Source of the DNA: Diadema antillarum
Lineage: Eukaryota
Direction of reading: 5' to 3'
Length of the DNA stretch: 64,000 bases
NCBI RefSeq assembly: GCF_040938485.1
Contig: NW_027271169.1
Span: forward strand, 62,001 to 126,000
Part shown: positions 22,601 to 63,350 of the stretch, in pieces
Layout of the letters: the number at the start of each line of letters is the position of its first letter
How positions within the stretch are numbered: the first letter of the stretch is position 1
Made by a program: the position numbers and the translations under genes
The notes under the pieces: model-generated
The model's input: only the letters and a program-made list of their open reading frames with translations
Databases searched by the model: none
What the model was told of the DNA's origin: nothing

Positions 22601-23198
22601 GCTGGTTTCTACCATTTTTACTCATTACTTTTTTTTTTTTTTTGGATAGAGTAATAGCTTTGTACTATGCTGTATATCCAGTATATTTCGTTTTATTTCT
22701 AACATTCTCGAGTTGTTTTATGCACAAAGAAGACAAGACATTGTCCACTGACATTGTCTTGTCTTTAACCATGTAGACAATTTTGTTTTATTGTTATACT
22801 TTGCTAGAAACGCGATATTCATCTTTTTGTATAATTATGACATTGATGAGTTTGATTTTTTTTTTTTTTGCTTTGTATTTTCGTCGTTATAGCTTAGGAA
22901 AGAAATGTGGCTGTGACGATATCCGAGTTGTGTGAGGATGTGACGAAATAAACACGTCTTTCCAGACATTTGAACTGCACAGACAGGTTGTTATCCTTCT
23001 GATGATTTTAGTGTACGTGCCATATAGCGTTTATTGCATGCAAGATTTAAAAAGGCTTCAAGCTTAAAAAAAGAAAAGAAATTCCGCTTTGTATATTAAC
23101 CTTGACAAATACATTGCAAACAACAGAGAACGCCGACAATTCATTAACTTTTGACGAATAGGTAAAGAAGGTATGAGCATTGAGGGTTTGTAATTTAA

Positions 23199-23757
23199 AG
23201 GACAAGTTCACCGTCATATACATGTGGATTGAGTGAAGGCAACAATGTTAGTAGAACACATCAGTGAAAGTTTGGGGAAAATCCGACAATCCGTTCAAAA
23301 GCTATGAATTTTTAAAATATCTGTGCAATCACTGCTGGAGGAGAAGACTACTGCAGTGCATGATGTCACATGCGTACAACGATATAAGGAAAATAAAAAG
23401 AGAATTTCACAAAACTTGACTTTTTGAGTAAAGTGAACATTTCCTCGACTTGTTACTGACTTATGTTAGGGGTGATATTATTCCCCCTGACTTCTGAAAG
23501 AGAGAAGTCGAGTGTTCTTTTATTATGTGAGAAAAATGAGAATATCTTGAATTTTCTTTATACCTTCTTTATATAGTTGTACTCATATGACATCACAAGC
23601 TATAGTAGTCTTCTCATCCAGCCCTGACTGAGCAGAAACTTCAAAAATTCATAACTTTTGAACGGATCGTCCGATTTTCCTCAAACTCTCATTGATATGT
23701 TCTACTAATATTGCTGCACTCACTTAACCCACATGTCTATGAAGGTGAACTTGTCTT
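23199..23757. mobile_element. TTAA-type palindromic MITE (AGGACAAG family, Kolobok-like), copy A
   Basis: TTAA|AGGACAAGTTCACC...GGTGAACTTGTC; long inverted arms; homologous to 52380-52949. Confidence 0.75.
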
Positions 23758-24709: not shown

Positions 24710-24861
24710 NNNNNNNNNNNNNNNNNNNNNNNNNNNNNNNNNNNNNNNNNNNNNNNNNNNNNNNNNNNNNNNNNNNNNNNNNNNNNNNNNNNNNNNNNNN
24801 NNNNNNNNNNNNNNNNNNNNNNNNNNNNNNNNNNNNNNNNNNNNNNNNNNNNNNNNNNNNN
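24710..24861. other. Assembly gap
   Basis: Run of 152 N. Confidence 0.99.
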
Positions 24862-36646: not shown

Positions 36647-37464
36647 TAGTGCGTATCAGAAAAAAAAAGCAATTCAACTTTGGAGAGCTACTATTTCATA
36701 ATTGTCGGCTATGTAGAGCATAATGTTGATTGTGGAAAAAGAGGAACTCTTCCTGTTTCCATTTATACCTAATTATGTTTACAAATGTCATGCATGACTG
36801 AGCGAATGAACTTCAAAGACAGCAATGACAAATAACACTTGTTCCAAGTTTGACTGTTATGAACGATGAATGTCTCACTGAATGGATGAGATCTGTCAAA
36901 AGAAAAGTGGCCAAATAAATAGGTCATCCTGTACGAGGGAAGGATTGTGTTTAGGGTTTGTGCATAGGGTTTCTTCTAACATTTTATGGTCCATAACCCT
37001 CAACATGTCCACCTTTCCGATAACTTATATAGCCCTTTTTTTTCTCTGTTCATGTTCAACACAATTATCATAGCTCGCAGCGACAAACCATGTGTTGAAT
37101 GTGAAAAGAGAAAATGGATAATGGGTTAGCCTTTGTGGGAGTGACCAAGTTATTGACAACTTGGCTATATGATGAAGGTTTATGGAACATAAAAGGTTAG
37201 GAGAAACCCTAAACACAAAACTAAAACTAGAGTTGTGCAGGCTGGCCTGTTAATTCATTGACAGATCTCATCCATTCAGTAAGGTAATTTCAATCGTGTT
37301 TTGTTTTTTCACGACAACGCTCAAACTTGAAAAAGTGCAATTTGTCTTTGATGTTCATGTGCTCAGTCATGCATGGCATCTGTCCACATGATTAGGTATT
37401 GCCGCTATGGGGAAAAAGTAGCCCTCCAAAGTTGGATTATCTTCTCCTTTTTTGATACGCACTG
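36647..37464. mobile_element. Tc1/mariner-type MITE
   Basis: TA TSD; TIR (C/T)AGTGCGTATCA; internal inverted repeats such as ACTGAATGGATGAGATCTGTCAA. Confidence 0.75.
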
Positions 37465-38290
37465 TACACTAGAGACATTAAAATCTTTTCTCAATAATAT
37501 ACAGGTCCAGAACCCTACAAATATTCATATACTACAAATTGTACTTTCACATGAAGAATAGCCAAGGATAACCACTGCTTCTTGAAGAATGAATACAATG
37601 CACAGTCTAATATTCAGGCTTTTTTATCGATTTTCCCCTTTACCTTTCCCAGCATCTCGACAAACCTTCCGCCTTTGACCATTTGAAAAGAATCAATGGC
37701 TATTGCAATAACAAAATATCAGCTTGATCAACTGTCAATGGGTACTAGGCACTTTCGACTGTGTGTACATGTCTCAGTTACTCGTGGCGTTACTGAAGAC
37801 TGATAACAAATGTCATCCCTATACAAAGTTGCTCGATCTTTAAGACAACTGCATTACATTCATTGACTGTAACCTTGCACGACTAAGTATCTACCCTACC
37901 AGTCTTGCAGTCGTTAGTTTATGATTATGAAGAGTCGTCATGCAATTTTAATGTGCACAATTCGTGGGCAGCAGAGAAAGATGTAACAAAAAGAGATATA
38001 AGTAGTCCTATGAAACTGAAAGAAAGAAAAATAGATAAATCCACTAAAGGTTACTTCAATTCATGTCCAGATTTATGACAAGCAAACCTATAGGACTATA
38101 GTGCTCAGATACACGTTAAACAAAGAACTCCAACCTATCCCATCCAATCACCCAGTGCAACTTTTATTAGCTCGGTAAGGCGGGGTGACAATCACATTGC
38201 GAATGTATCAGATTTTCACCATATCAAAATTTTTCATAAATGATCGATCTAAGTGACGTAAAAAAATTATCACTTGAGAAGTGAACTTAA

Positions 38291-38637
38291 AGGGGAAGGC
38301 TAGTAACTGATCAGTGGGAATCAGTGGAAATGCTGGGAGATGATTGTTCCAATCCTAATGGGATTCATTCTAGAGTTCATTGTATATCTATTGTTGTGTG
38401 AAAATGATTTGCTTCAGAACGGTCTCATATTCAAGTAATGTGCAGATTAATGCTCCGTCACTGACCAGGGACGCTAACCTGGAAGCATTAAACTGCACAT
38501 TACTTGAATATGAGACCATTCTGAAGCAAATCATTTTCACACAACAATAGATATACAATGAACTCTTGAATGAATCCCGTAAGGATTGGAACAATCATCT
38601 CCCAGCATTTCCACTGATCAGTTACTAGCCTTCCCCT
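38291..38637. mobile_element. Near-perfect palindromic TTAA MITE (347 bp)
   Basis: TTAA|AGGGGAAGGCTAG...CTAGCCTTCCCCT|TTAA; single TTAA empty site in the paralog at 47371-47374. Confidence 0.88.
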
Positions 38638-38808
38638 TTAATCACTGACTCACTGAAGCGTATATATTAGTTTTTATCCTATCGAATTTTCACATTCATT
38701 ATCGATCTCTGTGAAAAAAAAACCCTTGTCACTTGACAAGCTAGCTTTATCACTGACTTTCTAAACACGCCTGTTTATCGTTTTATTTCAGGAATTACAT
38801 TTGACATC

Positions 38809-39918
38809 ATGCCTACGATTAATTCAAGTCTTGATGTCTATGATCCATACTCTGATTCGACTCTGGTCATCAGTAACACGATTCTCGCCTCGATCGTCTG
38901 CCTCATCACCATCGTCGGCGTGCTCGGCAACAGTTTCGTCATCCTGCTCGTCTCCCTGTCCCGCCAGCTCCAGACAGTCACCAACGTCTTTGTAGTGAGT
39001 CTGACCCTTTCCGACCTGATCGGATGCGGCATGCTGAGCCTCGAGGCGGTGGCGCTAACGACGCTTGAGGGATGGCCATTACCTGATTGGGTGTGTCAAA
39101 TGGTGGGCGGGACCTGCCTCATCGCCTTCAAAGCGAGCATCGTCCACCTTGCCTTGATCAGTGTCGATAGATTCATCGTCATCACCCGCCCAAGAATCAA
39201 GTACAAGAAAATATACAGTAGCAGAAATGTGTTTTTCATGGTTTCCTTTGCTTGGCTAAGTCCGCTTTTGGGAATTGTCCTCCCGACAGCTCTAGGGTTT
39301 GGACGCCTAGGGTACAACGCAGATAACCATTTCTGTGCGTTTGATGGAACAAGGCTGCAGCTTAGGATTGTGTACATTATCGAGGAGGTACTCTTTGTTA
39401 CAACTTTCTCCATCATCAGCGCTTGTTATCTGAAAATCTTCATCTACGTCAAGGCCCAGCACCATAATCTTTTAAAGCTTTTCAAGAACAACTCCGGCAA
39501 GTCTACGGTACCAGAGCAGAGCGAGATCAAAATGCGTATGACCATCGATAAACGAGAGATCGAAATTACTAAGAACCTCTTTATCGTAGTTTGCGGGTTT
39601 TTCGCTTGCATTCTTCCCAACACGCTTTGCGTCTTGACGGAGAAATGCTACCTGAAGTATTTCAAATTCACCGCTGTTGTGTACTCCATCAATTCCTGCA
39701 TCAACCCATTCATCTACTGTTTCAAACAGCCACTTTTTCGTCAAATTTCCCTCTGTGTGTTCCGGTGTCGTTGGTCAAAGATTCCCAAACCATCTCCATG
39801 GTTACAGGGCCTAATAGCGAAGAACAAAAAGACAGAAGTGAGGAAAAATGATGACGTATCAAATAATGTGTCTGTGATTTCGACGGGCGAAATCTCAGTG
39901 TCGAAACAAACTACCTAG
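38809..39918 (+). CDS. Class A (rhodopsin-like) orphan GPCR, copy 1, 369 aa
   Basis: Seven TM segments; GN (TM1), LxxxD (TM2), C3.25, DRF, W4.50, CY (TM5), CILP (TM6), NPFIY; intronless CDS; splice acceptor at 38791. Confidence 0.95.
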   Translation: MPTINSSLDVYDPYSDSTLVISNTILASIVCLITIVGVLGNSFVILLVSLSRQLQTVTNVFVVSLTLSDLIGCGMLSLEAVALTTLEGWPLPDWVCQMVGGTCLIAFKASIVHLALISVDRFIVITRPRIKYKKIYSSRNVFFMVSFAWLSPLLGIVLPTALGFGRLGYNADNHFCAFDGTRLQLRIVYIIEEVLFVTTFSIISACYLKIFIYVKAQHHNLLKLFKNNSGKSTVPEQSEIKMRMTIDKREIEITKNLFIVVCGFFACILPNTLCVLTEKCYLKYFKFTAVVYSINSCINPFIYCFKQPLFRQISLCVFRCRWSKIPKPSPWLQGLIAKNKKTEVRKNDDVSNNVSVISTGEISVSKQTT

Positions 39919-47426: not shown

Positions 47427-48542
47427 ATGCCTACGATTAATTCAAGCCTTGACGGAAGCATTTATGATCCATACTCTGATTCGACCCTGGTCATCAGTAA
47501 CAGGATTCTCGCTTCGATCGTCTGTGTCATCAGTATCGTCGGCGTGCTCGGCAACAGTTTCGTTATCCTGCTCGTCTCCCTGTCCCGCCAGCTCCAGACC
47601 GTCACTAACATCTTCGTGGTCAGTCTGACCACCTCCGACCTGATCGGATGTGGCATGCTCAGCCTCGATGCGGTGGCGCTAACGACGCTTGAGGGATGGC
47701 CGTTGCCTGATTGGGTGTGTCAAATGGTGGGTGGGGTCACCCTCATCGCCTTCAAAGCGAGCATCGTCCACCTTGCCTTGATCAGCGTTGACAGATACAT
47801 CGTTATCACCCGCCCGAGAATGAAGTACAAAGAAATATACAGTAGCAGAAACGTGTTTTTCATGGTCTGCTTCGCCTGGCTAAGTCCGCTTTTGGCAATT
47901 GTCCTCCCGACAGCTCTAGGGTTTGGACGCCTAGGGTACAACGCAGATAACCATTTCTGCGTGTTTGATGGAACGAGGCTGCAGCTGAGGATCGTGTACA
48001 TTATCGAGGAGGTACTCTTTGTTACAACTTTCTCCATCATCAGCGCTTGTTATCTGAAAATCTTCATCTACGTCAAGGCCCAGCACCACAATCTTTTGAA
48101 GCTTTTCAAGAACAACTCCGGCAAGTCTGCGGCACCAGAGCAAAGCGAGATCAAAATGCGTATGACCATCGATAAACGAGAGATCGAAATTACTAAGAAC
48201 CTCTTTATCGTAGTTTGCGGGTTTTTCGTTTGCATCCTTCCCAACACGCTTTGCGTCTTGACGGAGAAATGCTACCTGAAGTACTTCAAATTTACTGCTG
48301 TTGTGTACTCCATCAATTCCTGCATCAACCCATTCATCTACTGTTTCAAGCAAACGCTTTTTCGTCAAATTTCCCTCTGTGTGTTCCGATGTCGGTGGTC
48401 AAAGATCCCTAAACCATCTCCATGGTTACAGGGCCTAATAGCAAAGAACAAAAAGACAGAAGTGATGAAAAATGATGACATACCAAATAATGTGTCTGTA
48501 ATTTCAACTGGCGAACTGTCAATGTCAAAACAAACAACCTAA
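47427..48542 (+). CDS. Class A orphan GPCR, copy 2, 371 aa
   Basis: Same motifs as copy 1 (DRY, CILP, NPFIY); closest paralog of copy 1; acceptor at 47406. Confidence 0.95.
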   Translation: MPTINSSLDGSIYDPYSDSTLVISNRILASIVCVISIVGVLGNSFVILLVSLSRQLQTVTNIFVVSLTTSDLIGCGMLSLDAVALTTLEGWPLPDWVCQMVGGVTLIAFKASIVHLALISVDRYIVITRPRMKYKEIYSSRNVFFMVCFAWLSPLLAIVLPTALGFGRLGYNADNHFCVFDGTRLQLRIVYIIEEVLFVTTFSIISACYLKIFIYVKAQHHNLLKLFKNNSGKSAAPEQSEIKMRMTIDKREIEITKNLFIVVCGFFVCILPNTLCVLTEKCYLKYFKFTAVVYSINSCINPFIYCFKQTLFRQISLCVFRCRWSKIPKPSPWLQGLIAKNKKTEVMKNDDIPNNVSVISTGELSMSKQTT

Positions 48543-49607: not shown

Positions 49608-51948
49608 GACCCCGTTTACAGTGCGGGGCTGGGCCGAGCCACCGCCGAGCCCAGCCTCAATTGCGGGGCCGAGCCTCGAAATTTTGTCCGTTTACACTGC
49701 TGGGCTCGGCCGCGCTTTTAATTCAAACCTTTCAATATTTTGTCGTAGTGGCGCTCTGCTTGTAAACAAACGCAATTTGGTATAGTCTGGTTTTCAGACC
49801 CTTTGCCAACTGGATTCCGTGGGGACGAAGTCGCCGTTCGGGCAAAGGCCTTTGCCGAAGGAAAAAATCCTTTGCAGGACAAAGCCACCTTAAACTATAC
49901 TAGTTTTCGACGTTGAGGGGGTTAATATCCTGAACAGCGAAACAGTACAGGCAGAGGGTTTGGAAGCCAGACTAAAATTGGCCGCGCATTTGGCCCAGTT
50001 TAGCTTACACTGAGAAAAGGCCGGGCTCCATGCAGAGCGAGGCCAAATGCGAGGCCAATCTTGGCCTCGCATTTGGCCTTTTGCGCATTTACACTGAAGC
50101 GGGGCTGGGCCGAGCCGCGGCCGAGCCCGGCCTCAATTCTCGCTATCGCCAATGACGTAAAAAGTACCCGGATGTTGATTTAAGCGTCATTTACGGTGCA
50201 TTATGGGATAGTCCGGTAGCAAAGTCACTTCCGTTCGTACGCGCGTGATACGTGACTAATGCTATTTACACACACAACCGACTGTATTCTACGTGTACTT
50301 CCGGTTTTCTCGACTTGAATTACAGCTTTAATATGATTTGAAATTTCTCCATTCTTAAGAAATTGCTGTTAATACGACTATTGGTTGTTGCTGCGAAGCT
50401 GCCATGTGTTGTTCGCACGACAATAAATGAAAAAAATCTGCAGAAATAGGACCCTTACTGGCATGCGAGACGTGACGTGGCCGCGTGGGTGAAGTTTGCG
50501 GGTGACTCCACAGCGCAGTACGTGCACGCGCGACTTACTGGTAGTGGTAGTTGCTAGTAGCACTAGCTAGGTAGTAGGCCTAGTGCCTACGTACATGTAC
50601 GTACATTGTACGTACTTACTCGGAAGAAATTGCTTCGGAGACAGGATAAGTTCGAGATCACGGTTCGTTCCCGATTGTGTTCGCGACATTTCGACAGAGA
50701 ACAAATAAAGAAAGAAGATGGGCATTCCATGACGATATACTGTATATCCAGGTGGGTGAATATTTTCCAGCATATTTTCAGCGTATGCAGAGATGACTTA
50801 TCTGTGATGTGCACATCGATCGCATGATCGCTGTACCGGTATGTGTTAGCTTATGCGCTGCGTGCATGCAGTGGCTAATGCAAAGCCGGCCGCCGCCGGA
50901 GGGGACTACAGTGTACGAGTATGACAGGCCTGGCCACACTCGCTGGCTCGGGCGGTACAGCGGCCTACTGTACTAGTATCCGTGGTCAGCGCTGCGCTAT
51001 AGGTAAGGTACACGTACGCGCACGCTAGCGTTGTGCAAATTATGCCCCGCGCCGGAAGTGCCCTTGCTACCAAGTGCACTAAATCTTGACGAAAAAGCCA
51101 CATCCGGGTACTTTTTACGTCATTGGCGATAGCGAGAATTGCGCGGCCGAGCCCCGCAATTTTGTCCGTTTGCGCTGCTGGGCTCGGCCGCGCTTTTAAT
51201 TCAAACCTTTCGACTTTGAGGGGGTTAATATCCTGAATAGCGAAATAGTACGGGCAGAGGGTTTGGAAGCCAGACTAAAATTGGCCGCGCATTTGACCCA
51301 GCTTACGTTTACACTGAGAAAAGGCTGGGATCGGCCGCGGCTCGTCCGCGGCCGAGACCACCTCCAGAGCGAGGCCAAGTTTGGCCCCCCATTTGGCCTT
51401 TGCGCGTTTACACTGAAGCGGGGCTGGGCCGAGCCCAGCCTCAATTGCGAGGCCGGGCCCCGCAATTTTGTCCGTTTACACTGCCGGGCTCGGCCGCGCT
51501 TTTAATTCAAACCTTTCAATATGTTGTCGTAGTGGCGATCTGCTTGTAAACAAATGCAATTTGGTATTGCCTGGTTTTCAGACCCTTTGCCAAATGAATT
51601 CCGTGGCGACGAAGTCGCCGTTCGGGCAAAGGCCTTTGCCGAAGGAAAAAATCCTTTGCAGGACAAAACCACTTTAAACTATACTAGTTTTCGACCTTGA
51701 GGGGGTTAATATCCTGAACAGCGAAATAGTGCAGGCAGAGGGTTTGGAAGCCAGACTAAAATTGGCCGCGCATTTGGCCCAGTTCACGTTTACACTGTTA
51801 AAAGGCCGGGCTCGGCCGCGGCCGAGACCACCTCCAGAGCGAGGCCAAACGCGAGGCCAATTTTGGCCTCGCATTTGGCCTTTTGCGCGTTTACACTAAA
51901 GCGGGGCTGGGCCGAGCCGCGGCCGAGCCTCGCACTGTAAACGGGGTC
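49608..51948. mobile_element. PIF/Harbinger-type non-autonomous element with internal tandem amplification
   Basis: TAA TSDs (49605-49607, 51949-51951); 18-bp perfect TIR GACCCCGTTTACAGTGCG; GTTTACACT subterminal motifs; empty site downstream of copy 1 near 40870. Confidence 0.9.
50139..51136 (+). mobile_element. Nested TIR element with a decayed THAP domain
   Basis: 37-bp perfect TIR CTCGCTATCGCCAATGACGTAAAAAGTACCCGGATGT, flanked by AATT on both sides; internal RRQDKF...RLCSRHF (50636-50692). Confidence 0.82.
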
Positions 51949-52379
51949 TAAGACACACAGACACATCATAACTGGAAACGTGATGTAAACACATTATGTA
52001 ATAATGGTGATGCATTTTGTGTAGCTTGAAAATAATTTGTGTGTGATCTGTTCTAAGAATTGGGCAGTCTGCTTTACATTCCAAATTGGTTGGATGGGGT
52101 TAGATGGTCGGATTAAAATTCATCTTTCATGGCAACGTACAGTAACATGAGTGTCATTTATTTATTTATTTATTTATTTTTTATCCGAGTTATGAATTGA
52201 AATATGAATTTATTCGATTCATACCCATTTCAATTTTTTTGGACCCCAAACAGGTATTTATTGTCTCCATAGTTCAACATTTCATATCACATACCTTTAC
52301 AAATTCATTACAAATACTCATTTTGAAATGCTGCTGGCTTGACAGTGTGATGCGGATATGTCGTGTTGTGGATCGTTAA

Positions 52380-52949
52380 AGGACGTGTTTACTCTGATAT
52401 GCATGTGGATTGAGTGAATGCATCAATATTAATAGAACACATCGGTGAAAATTTAGAAAAATCGGAAAATCCGCTTAAAAGTTATGAATTTTTGAAGTTT
52501 CAGTGCCGCCATCGCTGGATGTGAAGACTACTACAGTTTGTTATGTCACATGTGTAGAACAATACAAATAAAATATAAAGACAATTCAACATATTTTCAC
52601 CTTTCTCGCATACAAGCACTTGACCTGCCTGTCTCAGAAAGCAGGGAGGGGGGGGGGGGGGAATAATGTTACTCTTAACATACGTCAGTAACAAGTAGAG
52701 GGAATGTATACTTTTTCCGAAAAAAGACATTTTGTGGAATTCTCTTTATATTTTCTGTACATAGTGCTATGCATATGATGCATGTAACCTCACACACTGT
52801 AGTCTTCTCATCCCGCAATGACTGCTCAGAAACTTTAAAAATTCTTAACTTTGAATGGATTGTCCGATTTTCCTCAAACTTTCACTGATGTGTTCTACTG
52901 ATATTGCTACATTCACTCATCCACATGTATGTTAAGTTGATCTTGTCCT
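52380..52949. mobile_element. TTAA MITE (AGGACAAG family), copy B
   Basis: TTAA|AGGAC...CTTGTCCT|TTAA; homologous to 23199-23757. Confidence 0.78.
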
Positions 52950-53116
52950 TTAAGTAATGTTATGCAATTTTTATGTGCGTTTGTGTGAAATTCACTATGT
53001 GTTCAGTCCTTTTCATACCTGTGTCTTCAAACACAATATCTAATATCAGATTGGGGATTGTGGTAATCGCTCATTGGATGAATTTGCAGCGATAATGTAC
53101 AGACTTGCCATCCCAC

Positions 53117-53282: not shown

Positions 53283-53792
53283 TGTTGTTGTTTTTTTCCT
53301 TCAGTAATGCACTTCTTTAATCGAAGTGACTTATGTGAATGAGTTCTAAAGAACTATACAATATCACTTACATGAGCCAGAGAAAGAGAGGGAGAGAGGG
53401 AGAGAGAGAGAGAGAGAGCTTGAACTTTCTTTTCCAAGAGATCAGGAAGAAAAAATGAACTTTTACTGAATGGAAATGTGCTGACATTCTCATGAATATT
53501 TTTGGAGATGCATGTCCTCAAGATGTAAAGTCCAGTGTATCATAATCATGTGCTCCTTGAAACTTGACTCAATTCATCAGTGATTCCATATCTAGTATAT
53601 CTAACATCGAAAACTTAGTTGTGAGTGTTCTTAATATGATTCATCATTTCCACAGATTATTCAATGACAAGTACAAAAAAATGGTTTTAAGTGCATCTTT
53701 GTTTGATCGAAATGTTCAAAGAACAGTGTGATTGATGCTATCGACAATGTTTTTAAATGTATTTTTCTTCTTCATTTTGCAGGTGAGATCCA

Positions 53793-54947
53793 ATGGCTGT
53801 GTCTACCAGCATTAAAACAAATTCAACACTCATTGGGAGAGGAGATGATCCATACTCTAATTCAACTCTGGTAATTACTAACACGATTCTCACCTCGATC
53901 GTCTGCCTCATCACCATCATCGGCGTGCTCGGCAACAGTTTCGTCATCCTGCTCGTCTCCCTGTCTCGCCAGCTCCAGACAGTCACCAACGTCTTCGTGG
54001 TGAGTCTGACCCTCTCCGACCTGATCGGATGCGGCATGCAGAGTCTGCAGGCAGTGGCGCTCTTACACTTGAAAGGTTGGCCTCTACCAGAATGGGTGTG
54101 TCAAATGACAGGTGGAGTCCTACTTATCGCGTTCAAAGCAAGCATTGTTCATCTGGCGCTCATAAGTGTGGATAGATTCATGGTTATCACTCGCCCTAGA
54201 AACAGATATATGGAGATATACAACCGCAGAAACGTGTTTGTCATGGTCGCATCCGCCTGGTTATGTCCACTCTTCTTTATTGTTCTCCCTCCAGCTTTGG
54301 GATTTGGACGTCTAGGATACAACGCTGCTAATCACTTTTGCACGTTTGATGGTAACGAGTTCCAAGTAAGAATTGTATACGTCATAGAAGAGGTCCTTTT
54401 TGTCACGACTTTCTTGATCATCAGCACTTGTTATCTGAAAATCTTCATCTACGTCAAGACTCAGCATCACAACTTATTGAAGCTCTTCAAGAACAACTCC
54501 GGCAAGTCGATGGCACCAGAGCAAAGTGAGATCAAAATGCGTATGACCATCGATAAACGAGAGATCGAAATTACTAAGAACCTCTTTATCGTAGTTTGCG
54601 GGTTTTTCGCTTGCATCCTTCCCAACACGCTTTGCGTCTTGACGGAGAAATGCTACCTGAAGTACTTCAAAGTTACTGCTGTTGTGTACTCCATCAATTC
54701 CTGCATCAACCCATTCATCTATTGTTTCAAGCAGCCACTTTTTCGCCAAATATCTCTCTCTGTGTTCCAGTGTCGGTGGTCAGAGATTCCCAAACTTTCT
54801 CCTTGGTTACAGCGTATTATCACAGCAAAAAGGCCGACAGACGAAATCATGACGGGTGAGGACTTCCCGAACTCGTCATCAATGACAACCGACCGCTCGA
54901 CTTCAATGGCAGCCACCAGCTCGGCATCAATAGCACAGCTCCAGTGA
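53793..54947 (+). CDS. Class A orphan GPCR, copy 3, 384 aa (mosaic paralog)
   Basis: Seven TM motifs (DRF, CILP, NPFIY); distinct Ser/Thr-rich C-tail. Confidence 0.95.
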   Translation: MAVSTSIKTNSTLIGRGDDPYSNSTLVITNTILTSIVCLITIIGVLGNSFVILLVSLSRQLQTVTNVFVVSLTLSDLIGCGMQSLQAVALLHLKGWPLPEWVCQMTGGVLLIAFKASIVHLALISVDRFMVITRPRNRYMEIYNRRNVFVMVASAWLCPLFFIVLPPALGFGRLGYNAANHFCTFDGNEFQVRIVYVIEEVLFVTTFLIISTCYLKIFIYVKTQHHNLLKLFKNNSGKSMAPEQSEIKMRMTIDKREIEITKNLFIVVCGFFACILPNTLCVLTEKCYLKYFKVTAVVYSINSCINPFIYCFKQPLFRQISLSVFQCRWSEIPKLSPWLQRIITAKRPTDEIMTGEDFPNSSSMTTDRSTSMAATSSASIAQLQ

Positions 54948-55991
54948 TGGGTAGATTTGTGCTGCCTAATACATCAATGAAATAAAACATCTGTGTCATT
55001 TAAATGATAAATAAAGATAAATATTTGAGGGTATATAACGCCTCTAATATTGGACGCAAACTGTCAATTTGGTGATTAGTGGGAATATCAGTTGATACAA
55101 ATGAAAAGATAATTAAGGGTTCTTTTCTTTTCGTTGTTTAGATCTGAAGCACATATTTACACCCAAAAATGATTTTCACATGATCATGTCTTGATGAGAT
55201 GAATTATTGATTACGCCTTGTGTACTATGTAAGCTAATGCTGAAGTCACGAACGAGTACATGTGAAAGTATGTTTCTTAACTGAGCAAAATCCTTGTTTC
55301 TCAGACAAAAAAAAAAAAAAAATCTGCGTGATGATCCTTCCATTTCACTATAAATCATATTCTTGTAATATGTGTAATGAAATGTTTTTTTTTTTTTTAT
55401 TCTGCCATCAGCTCAAATATCTTACTTAGCAGAGTACAAATTTTTTGCTCCCCTCAGATCTAAGTGCAATTGGGTAAATCGTGAGAACACCTGTGAATTT
55501 AATTCTTTGTATATGCGAGCTTTGGCAATCTTCTCATACTAGATACCCCACTCTCAGTTTTTGTAAGTATAGGGTTAATATCAGGGATGTAAATTGACAC
55601 CTCCAATAGCCATTGATGATAATGGTTTAGCAGTAATGTGTGGAAAATGGGAGAGGATTTGTCTGAACGCAAAGCTGCAAGATTGCCTACATATTGTCAC
55701 TGTAATCTAGAATGAATGCGGAAACGGAGTTTAGTCTAGGTTGAACCATTGACAATATTTCAGATGATTATGTTTCAAATGGATGATTTCATCTGGTCAG
55801 CAGACGGCAATTTAGGAAAAGAAATCGGGATAACACAAAACAATACAAACAAGAATATTCACAGCATTCAAATTTTGTTACTACATACCATGTATAGTAT
55901 GACTTTTTTTCAAGAAATCTGACGTCCCGAAGCATTATCATAAAGATAGATGAACCTAGAGAAGGAAAAAAAAAAACATTCACGGTTTTAA

Positions 55992-56386
55992 GGTCATGGA
56001 ATAGTTTTGGTTTGAGGTGAGAATTCAACTTTTAACTTTTTGCGAGATACTTAGGAAGCGCTTTATGAAAATAAAGAGCATGCAAGAGGAATTCAAAGAT
56101 TATTTGATGAAAATGGGTTTTAAAATAGCTGAGACATCCCCCCTAAAAAAAAAATGTTAAAAACAAAGCGATGTTCATGAAAGGTGGGACCAACCTTTTA
56201 TTACGATCGCTTTGTTTTCGATATCTCAGCCAATTTAAAACCAATTTTCATCAAATAAACTTTGAATTCCTCTTAGAATTTATATGCTCTGACATTTTTA
56301 ATAAGAGGTTTCTCGTTATCTCCATAAAAGTCATCAAAAAAGGTAGAAACCTGAAGCATCATCTCAACTGAAACTGTACAATCCCT
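55992..56386. mobile_element. TTAA MITE (AGGGATGG family), copy C
   Basis: Homologous to 8760-9135; right end TGTACAATCCCT|TTAA. Confidence 0.7.
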
Positions 56387-56578
56387 TTAATGGAAGAACT
56401 CTTTGCTTCACGAGCTTACATGTTATTAAGATACGTTTCTATGATTCACTTTATACCACTGCTAACGATTTTCTAATTAAATTATATCAAAACAAAATGC
56501 CTTGTGGAATTTTTGCTTTGTATATTGTGTTTTACATTTTTTATGTTATTTCATTTCAATTGACTTGAAATGAATTAA

Positions 56579-58091: not shown

Positions 58092-59189
58092 ATGGCAGAG
58101 ATCACGGTGAATTCAACCTTTATCGGCAGCATCTACGACCCGTATGATGACTTGGAGTTGGTTATCAGCAACAGCGTTTTGGCCTGTGTAGTCGCCTTAA
58201 TCACAATAACGGGCGTGCTCGGCAACAGTTTCGTCATCCTGCTCGTCTCACTGTCTCGCCAGCTTCAGACCGTCACCAACGTCTTCGTGGTGAGTCTGAC
58301 CCTCTCCGACCTGATCGGATGCAGCATGCTGAGTCTTGAAATTGTGGCATTATTAAACCTGGATGGTTGGCCTTTGCCAGAATGGGTGTGTCAAATGACA
58401 GGTGGGGTATGCGTTATAGCGTTCGTTGCAAGTGTGGCCCATCTTGCACTGATCAGCGTTGATCGGTTTGTCCTCATAACCCGTCCCAAAACGAGGTACA
58501 TGCGGCTGTACAAGGGACGAAATATCATCATGATGGTAGCGTTTGCGTGGCTGGCGCCGCTTTTGTCGATTGTCCTGCCAACATCCTTAGGCTTTGGACG
58601 TCTCGGGTACAACGCCGCCAACTACTTCTGTGTGTTTGATGGAACCAAGCTCCAGCTCCGCATGGTACACATCTTCGAAGAGGTTTTGTTTGCCACGACT
58701 TTTTCCATCATTATATCTTGCTATGTGCGGATCTACCTGTATGTCAGGAGGCAGCATCGCAACCTCCTCCAGTTTTACGACGACAAGCCTGAAAGCTCCC
58801 AGGAACCACAGTCTTCTAGCATGCGAATGACTATAGATAAACGTGAGATTGAAATCACAAAGAATCTTTTTATGGTAGTTTGTGGATATTTCATCTGCGT
58901 CCTCCCAAACTCTTTTTGTGTGCTCTTTGAATCTTGTTACGTGAAATATTTCAAATTCACGGCCGTCGTGTACTCCATCAATTCTTGCATCAATCCCTTC
59001 ATCTATTGTTTCAAACAGCCACTTTTCCGTCAAATCTCCCTCTGCGTATTCCGACGTCGGTGGGCAGATATTCCGAAGCCATCTCCATGGTTACAGGGTT
59101 TGGTGGATGTGAAGGTGAAGAAAGGTACAACTGGAAGAACAGAAATCCCGAATACGGTCTCCATCTCCGCATCGCTGCAAGATGTATAA
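58092..59189 (+). CDS. Class A orphan GPCR, copy 4, 365 aa
   Basis: Seven TM motifs (DRF, CVLP, NPFIY); candidate acceptors at 58039 or 58089. Confidence 0.95.
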   Translation: MAEITVNSTFIGSIYDPYDDLELVISNSVLACVVALITITGVLGNSFVILLVSLSRQLQTVTNVFVVSLTLSDLIGCSMLSLEIVALLNLDGWPLPEWVCQMTGGVCVIAFVASVAHLALISVDRFVLITRPKTRYMRLYKGRNIIMMVAFAWLAPLLSIVLPTSLGFGRLGYNAANYFCVFDGTKLQLRMVHIFEEVLFATTFSIIISCYVRIYLYVRRQHRNLLQFYDDKPESSQEPQSSSMRMTIDKREIEITKNLFMVVCGYFICVLPNSFCVLFESCYVKYFKFTAVVYSINSCINPFIYCFKQPLFRQISLCVFRRRWADIPKPSPWLQGLVDVKVKKGTTGRTEIPNTVSISASLQDV

Positions 59190-59640: not shown

Positions 59641-62255
59641 AGTCACTTCATGGAATGGAAAATAAGACTTTTTGTTTGACATATTATGTGAGGTGACATC
59701 TACTTCTCCTACACAGTCGTTTTGAGGAGTGAATGACATCGTTTAGTAGTGGTGGTTGTATCACGAATCTGAGGTTAATGATCATACATGCATACTGTGT
59801 CTCGGAAATAAAAACGAAAATGCTGTCGAGAATTCTCGTTAGATATGAAAAAAGTAAAAACTGAATATGGTCGAATTTACCATACTCGTTAGTTAGATGA
59901 ATTGAAACGAATGATTTTTTTAAAATCCATCCTCAGAATATTTGTGATGAGACAAGTAAATTCGAAATGGTTTAACAGTAACATAGTGATATTGTTCACG
60001 ATGTCTTAATAGTCCCTTTGTGCTGACTAATTCTCGATTTCTTTTTTGAAGTTTGAATGTTCTCTAATTATTTCAACATTACCGCATGTATAATGTTAGA
60101 CAGGGTGTATAATATAACGAGAAAAAATAATCGTTTGGCATTTGTGCAATATTCAAGAATTGTCTTTGTGCGAAATATTGAATACATGCTCAAGAAATGG
60201 AGATGACTTCAGGTTTAGAGACAAGTGTCATAAATTGGGCGTTCAATTTTATTACCGGGACACTAGATAAATGTCTGTTATGGACATTATACAGTGGAAA
60301 GGATCAATTAACATTTATATCTATTAAGTCCAATAATCAGTCATCGACTATATTATTTAAGTAGACACCTATATTTCGAATATGTTCATTCAATCTACAC
60401 TTTCTTGATCAGGTTAGCTTATTCAGAGTCATGTAACAGTTCTAATCTTTGTTTTGTGTTGTATATGAGTGCGGATTTTTTCACCGAAAACATATTAATG
60501 GTAAGATAATTTCCAATGTACCGCTGTTTAACTCTCCACGGAGGTTTAAAAGCTAAATTCAGATGATAAACACCTCTTCTAGCCTATATTTTTCTCATTT
60601 CCACAACTATTTGCAAAACCTAATCCAAACATGGCACATGACTACATTCAATTGTGGAAAAATCAGTAGGCTAAGTATAAGAAATAGAACAGAGAAGTTT
60701 GGGAACTTAAGGGTAGAATCATAGTCGCGTGTAATCATAGAACAAAATTAATAAGTAACGTTGTGAATAATACGGAAAAGTACACCACTATGACTGCTTT
60801 AGGGAGCGCCCATGTTGTTGACACAACGCAACATGTTGGGGAATATATGGGATATTGACTTTTATGGGAAGATGGATCGTTCAAATGATATACTTTAATG
60901 GAAGGAAATGTATATGAATGATATTATGATAAATCCATGAGTTATGTTATGATAATAATAATAATAATGAAAACAATAAAAATAGTAGCTGCTACTATGT
61001 ACACCTGCTATGTTCCTCCCAGTAAGGTTCATGACTGTGAGTGCGCACTTTAACCATATACAATAAACCACATGATTCTTTACAATGATTTCTCATCCTC
61101 TCTCTTCCTTCGTTTTTTCTCACTGGCGATGTATTTTCCCGGCAAATAAGTTGAGTCAATGTCAATGTCAGTTTATGAATGTGGTGAAGGGGTATTCTTT
61201 ACGGTTTTTCAGTAGTGGCAGATCTTATACGAGAGTATGATCAGATGATTAAGTGGTTGTGGGTATGTATTCTCGAAATGCTCTTTTAAGCGAACTCAAA
61301 AAGAGGCGGAGTGATTGTTACATATTTCATATAATGCGTCACGACCAACAGCCAATGGCCTGGCTTTCGTAGAGCATTTTATAATCGGCAATAAGTGTTG
61401 AGAATTCAACACATGTCATTATCGTCTGGAGAAAGCTCCAAGGACACTGAAGGATATACAGTTACAGCTTGATAGTCAAATTCCTACGACCAAATAACAT
61501 TCTTCGGTCCTAGAGGGTGCTCGAAAACTGGAAGGAAACATTTCATCGGTAAGAAAACTGTTTCAATCATATTTTTTTCCTCACAACAAAATCCACAACG
61601 GTTTTAACTGAAATTTGCAAACCAATGGTTGCGCTTGAGAGTCAATTTCGCAAACTGTTGAAAAACAGACACGAAAATTTATAACTGAACACACAAGACA
61701 TCAAACACCGTAATTGTAATGATATCATGCCTAATTTATCGAAAATGTATTTCAGTTCACAATTCATAATATTTGTATTTCTTTTGACTGTACTTTAATA
61801 ATTTTATTCTGTTGCTCTTTCAAGAAATTTCAAATTAGTGATCAATTCTCGTTTGAATTCTGATGAGAAATGATAACATTTAACTGTTTTGGAGTAATTT
61901 GGCATAGCATAATAACTCTATAATGTTGTACATTGTACAAACATCAGGATAACGTTTTTGGGAGAATCATATCTTAAACCTCAATTTCATAACCAATTCA
62001 TAACATTTTCTCATCAATGTTGAATTGATTACTAAAGAAATAGTGATATCTGCTAGAATGAGCTCACATGTTGGCAATACAAGGAAACATCAAGTGTTTC
62101 AACATCTTTACTATAGTTGCAAATATTATCCGATGATTCGAAAGTGTTAAAATCAGTGTCTTTCTTCCACATAAGACTTACCCTTTAAAGTAATTAATTC
62201 GTTATCTGCTTTCATCCATTCATTCCCTGAATGTCCAGTATTGGCAGATGTCAGG

Positions 62256-63350
62256 ATGAACACCACATTGGATGTCAGCATCTACGACCCTTATGAGGAC
62301 TTAGTGTTGGTAATCAGTAACAGTGTTTTGGCCTGTGTAGTCGCCTTAATCACGATCACGGGCGTACTCGGCAACAGTTTCGTCATCCTGCTCATCTCAC
62401 TGTCCCGCCAGCTCCAGACCGTCACCAACGTTTTCGTTGTGAGTCTGACCCTCTCCGACCTGATCGGATGCGGCATGATGAGTCTTGAAATTGTGGCATT
62501 ATCAAATTTGGATGGTTGGCCTTTACCAGAATGGGTGTGTCAAATGACAGGTGGGGTGTGCGTTATAGCATTCATTGCAAGTGTAGCCCATCTTGCACTG
62601 ATAAGCATTGATCGATTTGTCCTCATAACCCGTCCCAAAGCCCGGTACATGCGACTCTATAATGGACGAAATATAATCATCATGATAGCCTTTGCCTGGC
62701 TGGCGCCGTTTTTGTCCATTGTCCTGCCAACATCCTTAAGCTTTGGACGTCTCGGGTACAACGCCAAAAACCATTTCTGCGTGTTTGACGGAGATAAGTT
62801 ACAGCTCCGCGTGGTGAACATTTTTGGAGCGGTTATCTTTGCCACAGCTTTTTCCATCATTATGTCATGCTATGTGCGGATCTACCTGTATGTGAGGAAA
62901 CAACATCGCAATCTTTTAAAATTTTACAGGGACAAGCCCGTTAAGTCTGTGGCACCACACAGAAATGAGTCTTCGAACATGCGAATGACTATAGACAAAC
63001 GTGAGATTGAAATCACAAAGAATCTTTTCTTTGTTGTTTGTGGATATTTCGTCTGCGTCCTCCCGAATTCTGTGTGTGTTCTGACAGAATCGTGCTATCT
63101 GAAATATTTCAAATTCACGGCCGTCGTATATTCCATCAATTCCTGCATCAACCCCTTCATCTATTGTTTCAAACAGCCACTTTTCCGTCAAATCTCCCTC
63201 TGCGTATTCCGACGTCGGTGGTCAGATATTCCAAAGCCATCTCCATGGTTACAGCGTTTGGTGACTGTGAAGATGAAGAAAGAAGTTACAACTGGAAGAA
63301 CAGAAATCTCGAAGACGGTCTCAATCTCTGCATCGGTGCAGGATGTATAA
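62256..63350 (+). CDS. Class A orphan GPCR, copy 5 (first in-frame ATG at 62256; the ORF track starts at TTG 62241)
   Basis: Seven TM motifs (DRF, CVLP, NPFIY); closest paralog of copy 4; acceptor at 62238. Confidence 0.93.
   Translation: MNTTLDVSIYDPYEDLVLVISNSVLACVVALITITGVLGNSFVILLISLSRQLQTVTNVFVVSLTLSDLIGCGMMSLEIVALSNLDGWPLPEWVCQMTGGVCVIAFIASVAHLALISIDRFVLITRPKARYMRLYNGRNIIIMIAFAWLAPFLSIVLPTSLSFGRLGYNAKNHFCVFDGDKLQLRVVNIFGAVIFATAFSIIMSCYVRIYLYVRKQHRNLLKFYRDKPVKSVAPHRNESSNMRMTIDKREIEITKNLFFVVCGYFVCVLPNSVCVLTESCYLKYFKFTAVVYSINSCINPFIYCFKQPLFRQISLCVFRRRWSDIPKPSPWLQRLVTVKMKKEVTTGRTEISKTVSISASVQDV

What the first reader, a model, noticed from the sequence alone, without database searches (positions are those of the whole stretch)
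54528..54731. GPCR3 is a chimera: ICL3-TM6-TM7 copied from GPCR1/2 onto a divergent TM3-TM5
Seen: 82 nt (EIKMRMT...VCGFF) are identical in copies 1, 2 and 3. Over 68 codons copy 3 differs from copy 2 by one synonymous and two non-synonymous changes, yet 8 of 9 codons of HLALISVDR differ. Its ECL1-TM3 start (CCAGAATGGGTGTGTCAAATGACAGGTGG) matches copies 4 and 5, and its C-tail and flanks are unique. Inference: the G-protein-coupling half is shared while the ligand half and promoter are private, giving many inputs to one output.
Basis: partly seen in the sequence, partly recalled or inferred. Interest (0 to 1): 0.7.

Follow-up and report, generated by a model that had tools for sequence, protein, structure and literature searches.

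The report
Gene-conversion mosaic in urchin GPCR cluster
One receptor gene in a tandem cluster of sea-urchin (Diadema) G-protein-coupled receptor genes is a patchwork whose back half has been kept nearly identical to its two neighbours by gene conversion while its middle stayed old and different, which is a real but ordinary pattern for tandem receptor families.

Summary
There is an 82-nt run (54528-54609) identical in three paralogs. Over 68 codons G3 differs from G2 by 1 synonymous and 2 non-synonymous codons. Eight of the 9 HLALISVDR codons differ.

The window lies in Diadema antillarum, in a cluster of at least 10 single-exon class A orphan GPCR genes.

G3 (53793-54947) has at least five segments:
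- a private N-terminus
- TM1-TM2, G1-like
- the outer half of TM2 plus ECL1, like G10 (about 40 kb away)
- a private ECL1-end-to-upper-TM5 segment, with synonymous sites saturated against G1/G2
- lower TM5 to helix 8 (54385-54781), G1/G2-like, with core dS 0.03-0.15, at or below ortholog dS of 0.1-0.3
- a private tail and private flanks

The same mosaic is in the second haplotype contig and in an independent D. setosum assembly, so it is not mis-assembly and it predates that species split. Haplotype-specific variants shared by paralogs, and a polymorphic G1-type tract in G2, suggest that exchange continues.

The best reading is interlocus gene conversion. The direction of transfer is not established. 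The "one output, many inputs" idea is untested and is weakened because ICL2 is private and TM6-TM7 also line the pocket. Bird gamma-c odorant receptors and opsins already show the same pattern.

The parts
38809..39918 (+). G1, single-exon class A GPCR ORF (369 aa)
   Evidence: ORF list; Pfam 7tm_1 E 2.9e-37
47427..48542 (+). G2, single-exon class A GPCR ORF (371 aa)
   Evidence: ORF list; translation and alignment
53793..54947 (+). G3, single-exon class A GPCR ORF (384 aa); the mosaic gene
   Evidence: ORF list; Pfam 7tm_1 E 1.3e-38; 99% identical to a D. antillarum RefSeq protein on the other haplotype contig
53853..54004 (+). G3 segment N-term end/TM1/ICL1/inner TM2: G1-like. From 53922 onward it is nearly nucleotide-identical in all 10 paralogs
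   Evidence: 10/160 differences to G1, dS 0.16. Family-wide third-position diversity 0.12-0.23 and GC3 0.86
54005..54084 (+). G3 segment outer TM2/ECL1: like G10, the last gene of the cluster, outside the window
   Evidence: 1-5 mismatches per 60 nt to G10 against 19-23 to G1/G2. dS 0.17. Segment tree groups G3 with G10 at 96/97. Holding G1+G2+G3 as one clade gives p-AU 0.039. Run test p<=2e-4
54085..54384 (+). G3 private segment: ECL1 end, TM3, ICL2, TM4, ECL2, upper TM5
   Evidence: 27% nucleotide divergence from G1/G2, with 47-51 of 67 synonymous sites changed (saturated) and dN 0.15-0.16. No closer copy anywhere in the 1.75-Gb assembly; best non-allelic match 73-74%
54385..54781 (+). G3 tract shared with G1/G2: lower TM5, ICL3, TM6, ECL3, TM7, helix 8
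   Evidence: 8-9% divergence from G1/G2 against 27% in the private segment, Fisher p about 1e-10 to 1e-11. G3 stem branch 0.027 against 0.38
54525..54696 (+). Most recent core of the shared tract; contains the 82-nt three-way identical run 54528-54609
   Evidence: 3/172 differences to G2 and 6/172 to G1, against 9 to its own D. setosum ortholog. dS 0.03 and 0.15. Run test p<=2e-4
54782..54947 (+). G3 private C-terminal tail
   Evidence: 45-47% divergence from every paralog; 5% from the D. setosum ortholog
39380..39776 (+). G1 counterpart of the shared tract
   Evidence: Column-to-coordinate map; distances
48004..48400 (+). G2 counterpart of the shared tract. Its 3' part (from about 48173) differs between the two haplotypes by a G1-type tract
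   Evidence: Coordinate map. A2 and B2 show 0 differences in columns 1-642 but 15 in columns 643-1000 and 12 in the tail. The B2 states match G1 sequences
58092..59189 (+). G4, paralog of the second subfamily (365 aa)
62256..63350 (+). G5, paralog (364 aa from the ATG at 62256; the ORF list starts at a TTG at 62241)

Best explanation
G3 is an old member of a tandem, same-strand cluster of at least 10 single-exon rhodopsin-type orphan GPCR genes in the sea urchin Diadema antillarum. It is the sister lineage of G1/G2. Repeated short-tract interlocus (ectopic) gene conversion with its neighbours has made its coding sequence a mosaic.

- The lower TM5-ICL3-TM6-TM7-helix 8 tract (about 54385-54781) is exchanged among G1, G2 and G3.
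- The TM1-ICL1-TM2 tract is exchanged with G1, and partly with the whole family.
- The outer TM2-ECL1 tract is shared with G10.
- The ECL1-end-to-upper-TM5 segment, the N-terminus, the C-tail and both flanks have escaped conversion and keep the old divergence.

Shown: the mosaic, its statistical support, its presence in two haplotypes and in a second species, and variation between haplotypes.

Inferred: the mechanism (heteroduplex repair between misaligned tandem paralogs), and the reason the middle segment escapes. That reason is either selection for a distinct receptor or simply that 27% divergence no longer supports heteroduplex formation. Direction of transfer is not resolved.
For: 1. Synonymous divergence. 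G3 versus G1/G2 is saturated in 54085-54384 (47-51 of 67 synonymous sites changed). In the core it is dS 0.03 (G2) and 0.15 (G1). Ortholog dS between D. antillarum and D. setosum is 0.1-0.3 in the same segments.

2. Control pairs. G1-G4, G2-G4, G3-G4, G1-G10 and G3-G10 have a core/TM3-5 divergence ratio of 0.82-0.87. G3-G1/2 pairs give 0.06-0.43, in all three genomes. The region is therefore not intrinsically slow.

3. Internal control. MTIDKREIEITKNLF is amino-acid-invariant in all 10 paralogs, yet its third-position diversity is 0.39-0.43. G1, G2 and G3 are nucleotide-identical there.

4. Sawyer-type run test on 566 polymorphic sites. A1-A3, A2-A3 and A3-A10 each give p<=2e-4, the floor of 5000 permutations.

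5. Partition trees. The G3 stem is 0.38 in TM3-TM5 and 0.027 in TM5e-H8. The TM2e-ECL1 segment groups G3 with G10. Holding G1+G2+G3 together there gives p-AU 0.039.

6. Assembly independence. The same mosaic is in the second haplotype contig C587, which is colinear and 92.7-99.5% identical including non-coding DNA. It is also in an independent D. setosum assembly.

7. Signs of continuing exchange. At column 779 the derived A is present in G1, G2 and G3 of haplotype A, and T in all three on haplotype B. G2 of haplotype B carries a G1-type tract of at least 340 nt that is absent from haplotype A. D. setosum G1 keeps outgroup-like states at 6 sites where D. antillarum G1 has the G2/G3 states.

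8. GC3. It is 0.86 in the family-wide homogenised block, 0.61-0.68 in the G1-3 tract, and 0.44 in G3's private segment. This fits GC-biased conversion.
Against: The core-tract tree is unresolved. It does not reject monophyly of the three G3 sequences (support 74/73). Conversion of G3 itself after the species split therefore rests on small counts (3 versus 9 differences; one shared haplotype-specific site).

The two large partitions give the same broad topology, so the case rests on branch lengths and dS rather than on a topological conflict there.

The run test does not model rate heterogeneity along the gene.

That C587 is an allele rather than a very recent segmental duplication is inferred from colinearity and from an assembly size about twice a haploid genome. 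It is not proven.

No read-level data were available.
Confidence: 0.85

Rival explanations
1. G3 is a young duplicate of G1/G2. Its middle (ECL1 end to upper TM5), ECL1 and tail were overwritten by conversion from divergent donors. On this view the middle is the import and the 3' half is the original backbone.
For: G3 groups with G1/G2 in both large partitions. The outer TM2-ECL1 piece does look imported or shared with G10.
Against: No sequence in the 1.75-Gb assembly is closer to 54085-54400 than G1/G2 themselves at 73-74%. The tail and both flanks are also private, as expected of an old gene. G1 and G2, a real younger pair, still share 65-77% similarity in their flanks.
Confidence: 0.07
2. 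There is no exchange. The 3' half is simply under very strong constraint, including at synonymous sites (an RNA element, codon bias or a mutational cold spot), while TM3-TM5 of G3 evolved fast.
For: TM7/NPxxY and TM1-TM2 show reduced third-position diversity family-wide. An unlinked paralog on contig C18 is also less diverged in TM1-TM2, at 10-15% against about 35-40% elsewhere.
Against: Control pairs show the core is about as diverged as TM3-5, ratio 0.82-0.87. Third positions differ at 0.4 across the family in the amino-acid-invariant MTIDKREIEITKNLF stretch. Paralog dS of 0.03 is below ortholog dS. Haplotype-specific states are shared by paralogs. dN/dS in G3's TM3-5 is low with saturated dS, so this is old divergence and not fast protein evolution.
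Confidence: 0.03
3. Assembly or polishing artefact: reads from G1/G2 were used to polish G3, or the tract is a collapsed repeat.
For: Near-identical tracts in tandem paralogs are where such errors occur. No reads could be inspected.
Against: The same mosaic, with its own private differences, appears in two separately assembled contigs of this genome and in an independent D. setosum chromosome-scale assembly. G3-specific diagnostic sites persist inside the tract in all three, for example column 891 G.
Confidence: 0.02
4. A single unequal crossover produced a Lepore-type hybrid gene between a G2-like and a G4-like parent.
For: G3 sits between G2 and G4. Its 29-mer at the start of TM3 matches G4/G5.
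Against: There are at least 4 breakpoints, not one. Both flanks and the tail are private, not parental. The middle segment matches neither neighbour.
Confidence: 0.02

Closest known systems
Bird gamma-c odorant receptors: 'partitioned gene conversion tracts' (bioRxiv 10.1101/2025.11.14.688425, read)
   Same: These are single-exon class A GPCRs in tandem clusters. Their ORFs are mosaics of homogenised and non-homogenised subregions. Homogenisation includes synonymous third positions. Trees from the two kinds of region have very different branch lengths. The authors propose that conversion keeps the scaffold uniform while pocket regions stay diverse.
   Different: Here the family is small (at least 10 genes) and belongs to an echinoderm orphan lineage. 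Exchange is structured in sub-groups: G1-3 for the 3' half, G3-G10 for ECL1, and all copies for TM1-TM2. The mosaic boundaries are shared by two species, and two haplotypes show polymorphic tracts. No ligand or expression data exist.
Gene conversion between tandem opsin paralogs (fish LWS and RH2a opsins, PMC11291592 and PMC3514295 listed; primate L/M opsins from general knowledge)
   Same: These are adjacent GPCR paralogs homogenised over most of the coding sequence. A few functionally decisive segments or sites stay distinct.
   Different: In opsins the escaping sites are known spectral-tuning residues and selection is demonstrated. Here the escaping segment is 300 nt of unknown function, and a neutral homology barrier explains it equally well.
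Phylogenetic mosaicism across human rhodopsin-type GPCRs (Allaby and Woodwark 2007, PMC2684142)
   Same: They report segment-wise conflicting ancestry within class A GPCRs and attribute it to frequent recombination.
   Different: That work concerns ancient events inferred at protein level among distant receptors. This case is recent, at nucleotide level, within one tandem array, and datable against a sister species.
Echinoderm lineage-specific GPCR expansions ('surreal-GPCRs' of S. purpuratus; PMC7042368)
   Same: Both are single-exon rhodopsin-type receptors in tandem arrays that expanded independently in an echinoderm lineage. In one search, Lytechinus and Strongylocentrotus each gave only one protein at 62-64% identity.
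   Different: Membership in the defined surreal-GPCR groups A-F was not tested. NCBI names these genes 'melatonin receptor-like' or 'allatostatin-A receptor-like'. Those are automatic names.

Membership tests
Rhodopsin-type (class A) GPCR, Pfam PF00001 7tm_1 | Match to the 7tm_1 profile above the gathering score over the seven helices | tested here: met
   G3 133.4 bits (cut-off 30.5), residues 47-310, profile 1-260/260. G1 129 bits, G4 133.9 bits
Rhodopsin-type (class A) GPCR, Pfam PF00001 7tm_1 | Hallmark motifs: N1.50, D2.50, C3.25-ECL2 Cys pair, D/ERY, CWxP, NPxxY | tested here: inconclusive
   Read directly from the translation: GN (N48), LSD (D76), C103 and C183, DRF (R128) and NPFIY (P307) are present. 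CWxP is replaced by C-I-L-P, so there is no W6.48
Interlocus gene-conversion mosaic (concerted evolution of tandem paralogs) | Region-specific collapse of synonymous divergence between paralogs, relative to the rest of the gene and to control pairs | tested here: met
   dS 0.03-0.15 in the core against saturated in TM3-5. Control pairs have ratio 0.82-0.87
Interlocus gene-conversion mosaic (concerted evolution of tandem paralogs) | Significant runs of concordant polymorphic sites (Sawyer/GENECONV-type test) | tested here: met
   My own permutation version gives p<=2e-4 for A1-A3, A2-A3 and A3-A10, and for several other pairs in the cluster. GENECONV itself was not run
Interlocus gene-conversion mosaic (concerted evolution of tandem paralogs) | Incongruent genealogies between segments | tested here: inconclusive
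   The TM2e-ECL1 segment places G3 with G10. Holding G1+G2+G3 together gives p-AU 0.039 on 80 columns, with the group named after the data were seen. The two large partitions share topology but differ 14-fold in the G3 stem
Interlocus gene-conversion mosaic (concerted evolution of tandem paralogs) | Paralogs within a species closer than orthologs between species in the tract | tested here: inconclusive
   In the core, A3-A2 is 3, A3-S3 is 9 and A2-S2 is 5 differences. The core tree is unresolved and G3 monophyly is not rejected. The G1 pattern at columns 819-866 implies one event after the split, in one lineage or the other
Interlocus gene-conversion mosaic (concerted evolution of tandem paralogs) | Partners linked, close together and in the same orientation | tested here: met
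   G1, G2 and G3 lie on the + strand within 16 kb. The whole cluster spans about 59 kb on C281
Melatonin or allatostatin-A receptors (names given by NCBI's pipeline) | Orthology to characterised melatonin or allatostatin-A/galanin-type receptors | tested here: not met
   The best solved-structure matches are muscarinic M4 (E 3e-20), 5-HT4 and squid rhodopsin. MT2 and GALR1 score weaker, at E about 4e-15. There is no clear affinity to any one family, so I treat these genes as orphans. No proper orthology tree was built
Aminergic receptors / opsins (top structural neighbours by sequence) | D3.32 amine counter-ion; K7.43 retinal-binding lysine | tested here: not met
   Counting from C3.25 (C103) and P7.50 (P307) in the translation, 3.32 is Leu110 and 7.43 is Ser300
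Unequal-crossover hybrid gene (Lepore type) | One breakpoint, with 5' and 3' flanks inherited from the two parents | tested here: not met
   At least 4 breakpoints; private flanks
Sea-urchin 'surreal-GPCR' chemosensory expansions | Placement in groups A-F of Raible et al. and expression in tube feet or pedicellariae | not tested
   Only the general features were seen: single exon, tandem array, lineage-specific expansion

The most novel reading that the evidence does not exclude
The tract boundaries are held by selection and not only by a homology barrier. On this reading the cluster evolves as modules. Conversion keeps a common TM1-TM2 and TM5-ICL3-TM6-TM7-H8 scaffold and transducer interface across receptors. 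Selection protects a private TM3-ICL2-TM4-ECL2 cassette in each gene. The boundaries are stable across the D. antillarum-D. setosum split. This would be an invertebrate parallel to the 'partitioned conversion' model proposed for bird gamma-c odorant receptors.
Probability: 0.2. Interest if true: 0.5.

Novelty: new member of a known kind. Interest (0 to 1): 0.3.

Why it matters
The locus is a clean, datable example of short-tract concerted evolution inside a receptor gene. It offers two haplotypes, a sister species and an internal control stretch that is invariant in protein but variable in DNA.

It carries three practical warnings. Whole-gene trees and orthology calls for echinoderm GPCR clusters will mislead. 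Automatic names such as 'melatonin receptor-like' should not be trusted. dN/dS scans on such clusters need partitioning.

If the escape of TM3-TM4-ECL2 were shown to be selective, the locus would support modular evolution of chemoreceptor-like GPCRs outside vertebrates. As it stands, the finding adds a case and no new principle.

Tried and rejected
- Whole-genome search for a donor of G3's private middle segment found nothing closer than G1/G2 at 73-74%. This rejects 'imported middle' for this genome.
- The core-tract tree and clade test, meant to show conversion of G3 after speciation, were unresolved and G3 monophyly was not rejected. I therefore do not claim that the main event postdates the species split. 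The shared mosaic in D. setosum shows it predates it.
- Flank comparison looked for a duplication unit including G3. Only dispersed or foldback repeats matched.
- Comparison with the unlinked paralog on C18 asked whether the TM1-TM2 block is purely constraint. The result was intermediate (10-15% divergence), so both constraint and conversion probably act there.
- The solved-structure search gave no specific receptor family.
- I did not run structure prediction, complex prediction, the big representative search or the protein-atlas search. The question is one of nucleotide genealogy, and the family scans left no doubt about the fold.
- The D. setosum G3 ortholog was compared as aligned nucleotides. 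The 8 inserted columns dropped out because G3 has gaps there. No mended version was made.
- The N run at 24710-24861 was left untouched.
Full report
**Observation.** The window holds five same-strand, single-exon ORFs of 364-384 aa: G1 38809-39918, G2 47427-48542, G3 53793-54947, G4 58092-59189 and G5 62256-63350. All are rhodopsin-type GPCRs (7tm_1, E about 1e-38).

- The 32-mer starting at 54528 recurs at 39523 and 48147 with no mismatch.
- The three-way identical run is 54528-54609, 82 nt.
- Over 54528-54731, G3 differs from G2 by one synonymous and two non-synonymous codons.
- Eight of the nine HLALISVDR codons differ between G3 and G2.
- The 29-mer at 54087 recurs in G4 and G5.
- The tail and 3 kb of each flank of G3 match no other paralog, apart from dispersed repeats.

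**What the locus is.** Protein hits identify the organism as the sea urchin Diadema antillarum, at 99-100% identity.
- The window is C281:62001-126000 of a 1.75-Gb assembly.
- The cluster continues beyond the window to at least 10 paralogs, G1-G10, over about 59 kb.
- A second contig, C587, carries the same genes in the same order. It is 92.7-99.5% identical, including non-coding DNA with indels.
- I read C587 as the other haplotype of a highly heterozygous animal. This is an inference, resting also on an assembly about twice the size suggested by the roughly 40-Mb D. setosum chromosomes.
- D. setosum (GCA_964275005.2) has the syntenic cluster.
- Its G3 ortholog is unannotated. It lies at L034:5080-6242 and carries one 8-nt insertion in TM2 that shifts the frame. 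The frame is otherwise open.
- Lytechinus and Strongylocentrotus each gave a single protein at 62-64%, so the cluster looks like a diadematoid expansion.
- The closest solved structures are muscarinic, 5-HT4 and squid rhodopsin, at only E 1e-17 to 1e-20.
- Position 3.32 is Leu and 7.43 is Ser, so these are orphans. The NCBI names ('melatonin receptor-like', 'allatostatin-A receptor-like') are automatic.

**Anatomy of the mosaic.** I aligned 26 nucleotide sequences: two haplotypes of G1-G10 plus six D. setosum genes. I then slid 60-nt windows along G3.

| G3 coordinates | Receptor part | Affinity |
|---|---|---|
| 53793-53852 | N-terminus | private |
| 53853-54004 | TM1 / ICL1 / inner TM2 | G1-like (10/160 differences); from 53922 nearly identical in all ten paralogs |
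| 54005-54084 | outer TM2 / ECL1 | like G10, 40 kb away (1-5 mismatches per 60 nt against 19-23 to G1/G2) |
| 54085-54384 | ECL1 end, TM3, ICL2, TM4, ECL2, upper TM5 | private (27% from G1/G2, 33-39% from the rest) |
| 54385-54781 | lower TM5, ICL3, TM6, ECL3, TM7, helix 8 | G1/G2-like; core 54525-54696 has 3/172 differences to G2 and 6/172 to G1 |
| 54782-54947 | C-tail | private |

**Why this is gene conversion.**
- Nei-Gojobori estimates for G3 against G1/G2 give saturated dS in the private segment (47-51 of 67 synonymous sites changed, dN 0.15-0.16). In the core, dS is 0.03 to G2 and 0.15 to G1.
- Orthologs between the two species differ by dS 0.1-0.3 in the same segments.
- The contrast is not regional constraint. 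Control pairs (G1-G4, G2-G4, G3-G4, G1-G10, G3-G10) have a core/TM3-5 divergence ratio of 0.82-0.87. G3-G1/2 pairs give 0.06-0.43 in each of the three genomes, with Fisher p from 5e-5 to 1e-14.
- MTIDKREIEITKNLF is amino-acid-invariant in all ten paralogs, yet its third-position diversity is about 0.4 across the family. G1, G2 and G3 are nucleotide-identical there.
- A Sawyer-type permutation of 566 polymorphic sites gives p<=2e-4 for G1-G3, G2-G3 and G3-G10. It also flags other pairs (G5-G6, G6-G7, G7-G9, G8-G9), so exchange is general in the cluster.
- In ML trees G3 sits beside G1/G2 in both large partitions. Its stem is 0.38 substitutions per site in TM3-TM5 and 0.027 in TM5e-H8.
- In outer TM2/ECL1, G3 groups with G10 (96/97). 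Forcing G1+G2+G3 together costs 7.2 log-likelihood units, p-AU 0.039. This is a short segment, and the group was chosen after the data were seen.
- GC3 is 0.86 in the family-wide homogenised TM1-TM2 block, 0.61-0.68 in the G1-3 tract and 0.44 in G3's private segment. This is as expected under GC-biased conversion.
- No sequence in the assembly is closer to the private segment than G1/G2 at 73-74%. The middle is therefore G3's own old sequence and not an import.

**Artefact and other rivals.**
- The mosaic is present, with private differences, in both contigs of this genome and in the independent D. setosum assembly. G3-specific sites persist inside the tract in all three. Mis-assembly is very unlikely, though I could not inspect reads.
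- A single unequal crossover is excluded by at least 4 breakpoints and private flanks.
- Fast protein evolution of TM3-5 is excluded by saturated dS with low dN/dS.

**Timing and direction.** D. setosum G3 has the same mosaic, so the main homogenisation of G3 with G2 predates the species split. The core tree does not reject G3 monophyly.

Later exchange is suggested by four observations:
- In the core, G3-G2 on haplotype A differ at 3 sites. That equals the allelic G3 difference and is a third of the 9 differences to the ortholog.
- At column 779 a derived A is carried by G1, G2 and G3 on haplotype A, and T by all three on haplotype B.
- G2 alleles are identical over columns 1-642. They then differ at 27 sites downstream, where haplotype B carries G1-type states, some shared only with D. 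setosum G1.
- D. setosum G1 keeps states shared with G4/G10 at six sites in columns 819-866. D. antillarum G1 has the G2/G3 states there. This needs one conversion after the split, in one lineage or the other.

None of this shows that G3 was the recipient. 'Copied from GPCR1/2' is not established.

**Function.** No data bear on ligand or coupling.
- The shared tract contains ICL3, the inner ends of TM5/TM6 and helix 8, all of which contact G proteins.
- The private part contains ICL2: RNRYMEIYNRR in G3 against RIKYKKIYSSR in G1. The tail is also private.
- The shared tract includes TM6, ECL3 and TM7, which normally line the class A pocket.
- G3 differs from G1/G2 mainly in ICL2, TM4, ECL2 and positions 3.28/3.31/3.32. 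TM5 is nearly the same.
- 'Many inputs, one output' is thus a possible but untested and over-tidy reading.
- The middle segment may persist because of selection. Equally, at 27% divergence it may no longer offer the homology that heteroduplex formation needs.

**Comparison and novelty.** A bioRxiv preprint on bird gamma-c odorant receptors describes the same picture. It reports mosaics of homogenised and diverse subregions, similarity at third positions and longer branches in diverse regions. [quoted passage not shown]

Conversion between tandem opsins, and recombinational mosaicism among human GPCRs, are also on record. Echinoderm single-exon GPCR arrays are known.

Two earlier notes of this scan on the same cluster (TM1-ICL1-TM2 homogenisation; coding regions as conversion mosaics) agree with what I measured.

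**Verdict.** This is a new member of a known kind: well supported, tidy and ordinary. I score interest at 0.3. The most novel reading not excluded is that selection maintains the module boundaries, at probability about 0.2.

Noticed in passing
L034:5080-6242 (D. setosum OZ188196.1, between the genes for P0060 and P0064): The D. setosum ortholog of G3 is unannotated. It carries a single 8-nt insertion (ACCAATTG, like an imperfect local duplication) in TM2 that shifts the frame, and is otherwise open to the normal stop. Overall dN/dS against D. antillarum G3 is roughly 0.2, so this is either a very recent pseudogene or an assembly error.
   Followed up: partly
G000:C587:2350953-2352044 (haplotype-B copy of G6, outside the window): This copy has two in-frame stops (1 TGA, 1 TAA). 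The C281 allele is intact, so it appears to be a segregating pseudogene in the cluster.
   Followed up: no
window 53922-54046 and the same block in all ten paralogs: The TM1 end-ICL1-TM2 block is nearly nucleotide-identical in all ten paralogs and both species (0-5 mismatches per 60 nt), with GC3 of 0.86. An unlinked paralog on C18 is 10-15% diverged here against about 35-40% elsewhere. Constraint and family-wide, possibly GC-biased, conversion probably both act. Another note of this scan already covers it.
   Followed up: partly
window 49644-50127 and 51137-51929: A GC-rich stretch (51.6% GC against about 38% background) between G2 and G3 contains tandem or dispersed repeat copies that are 83-93% identical.
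   Followed up: no
window 38280-38646, 36765-37399, 52376-52953 (copy at 23195-23755), 55985-56391 (copies at 8753-9139 and 14814-15139): Several foldback (self-inverted) elements of 370-640 bp lie in the intergenic DNA of the cluster, some with copies elsewhere in the window. They are probably MITE-like transposons.
   Followed up: no
window 53774-53792: A polypyrimidine run ending in ...ttttgcag lies 10 nt before G3's ATG and looks like a splice acceptor. This suggests a separate 5'-UTR exon upstream of the single coding exon.
   Followed up: no
window 24710-24861: A run of 152 N (gap or mask); left untouched.
   Followed up: no
window 54782-54947 vs L034 (G3 tail, D. antillarum vs D. setosum): In the private C-tail the orthologs differ by 8 non-synonymous changes and 1 synonymous change (dN 0.068, dS 0.027). 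The counts are small, but this is the only segment with dN above dS.
   Followed up: no
window 62241-62256: The ORF list starts G5 at a TTG at 62241. The first ATG, and the start that matches the other paralogs, is at 62256.
   Followed up: yes
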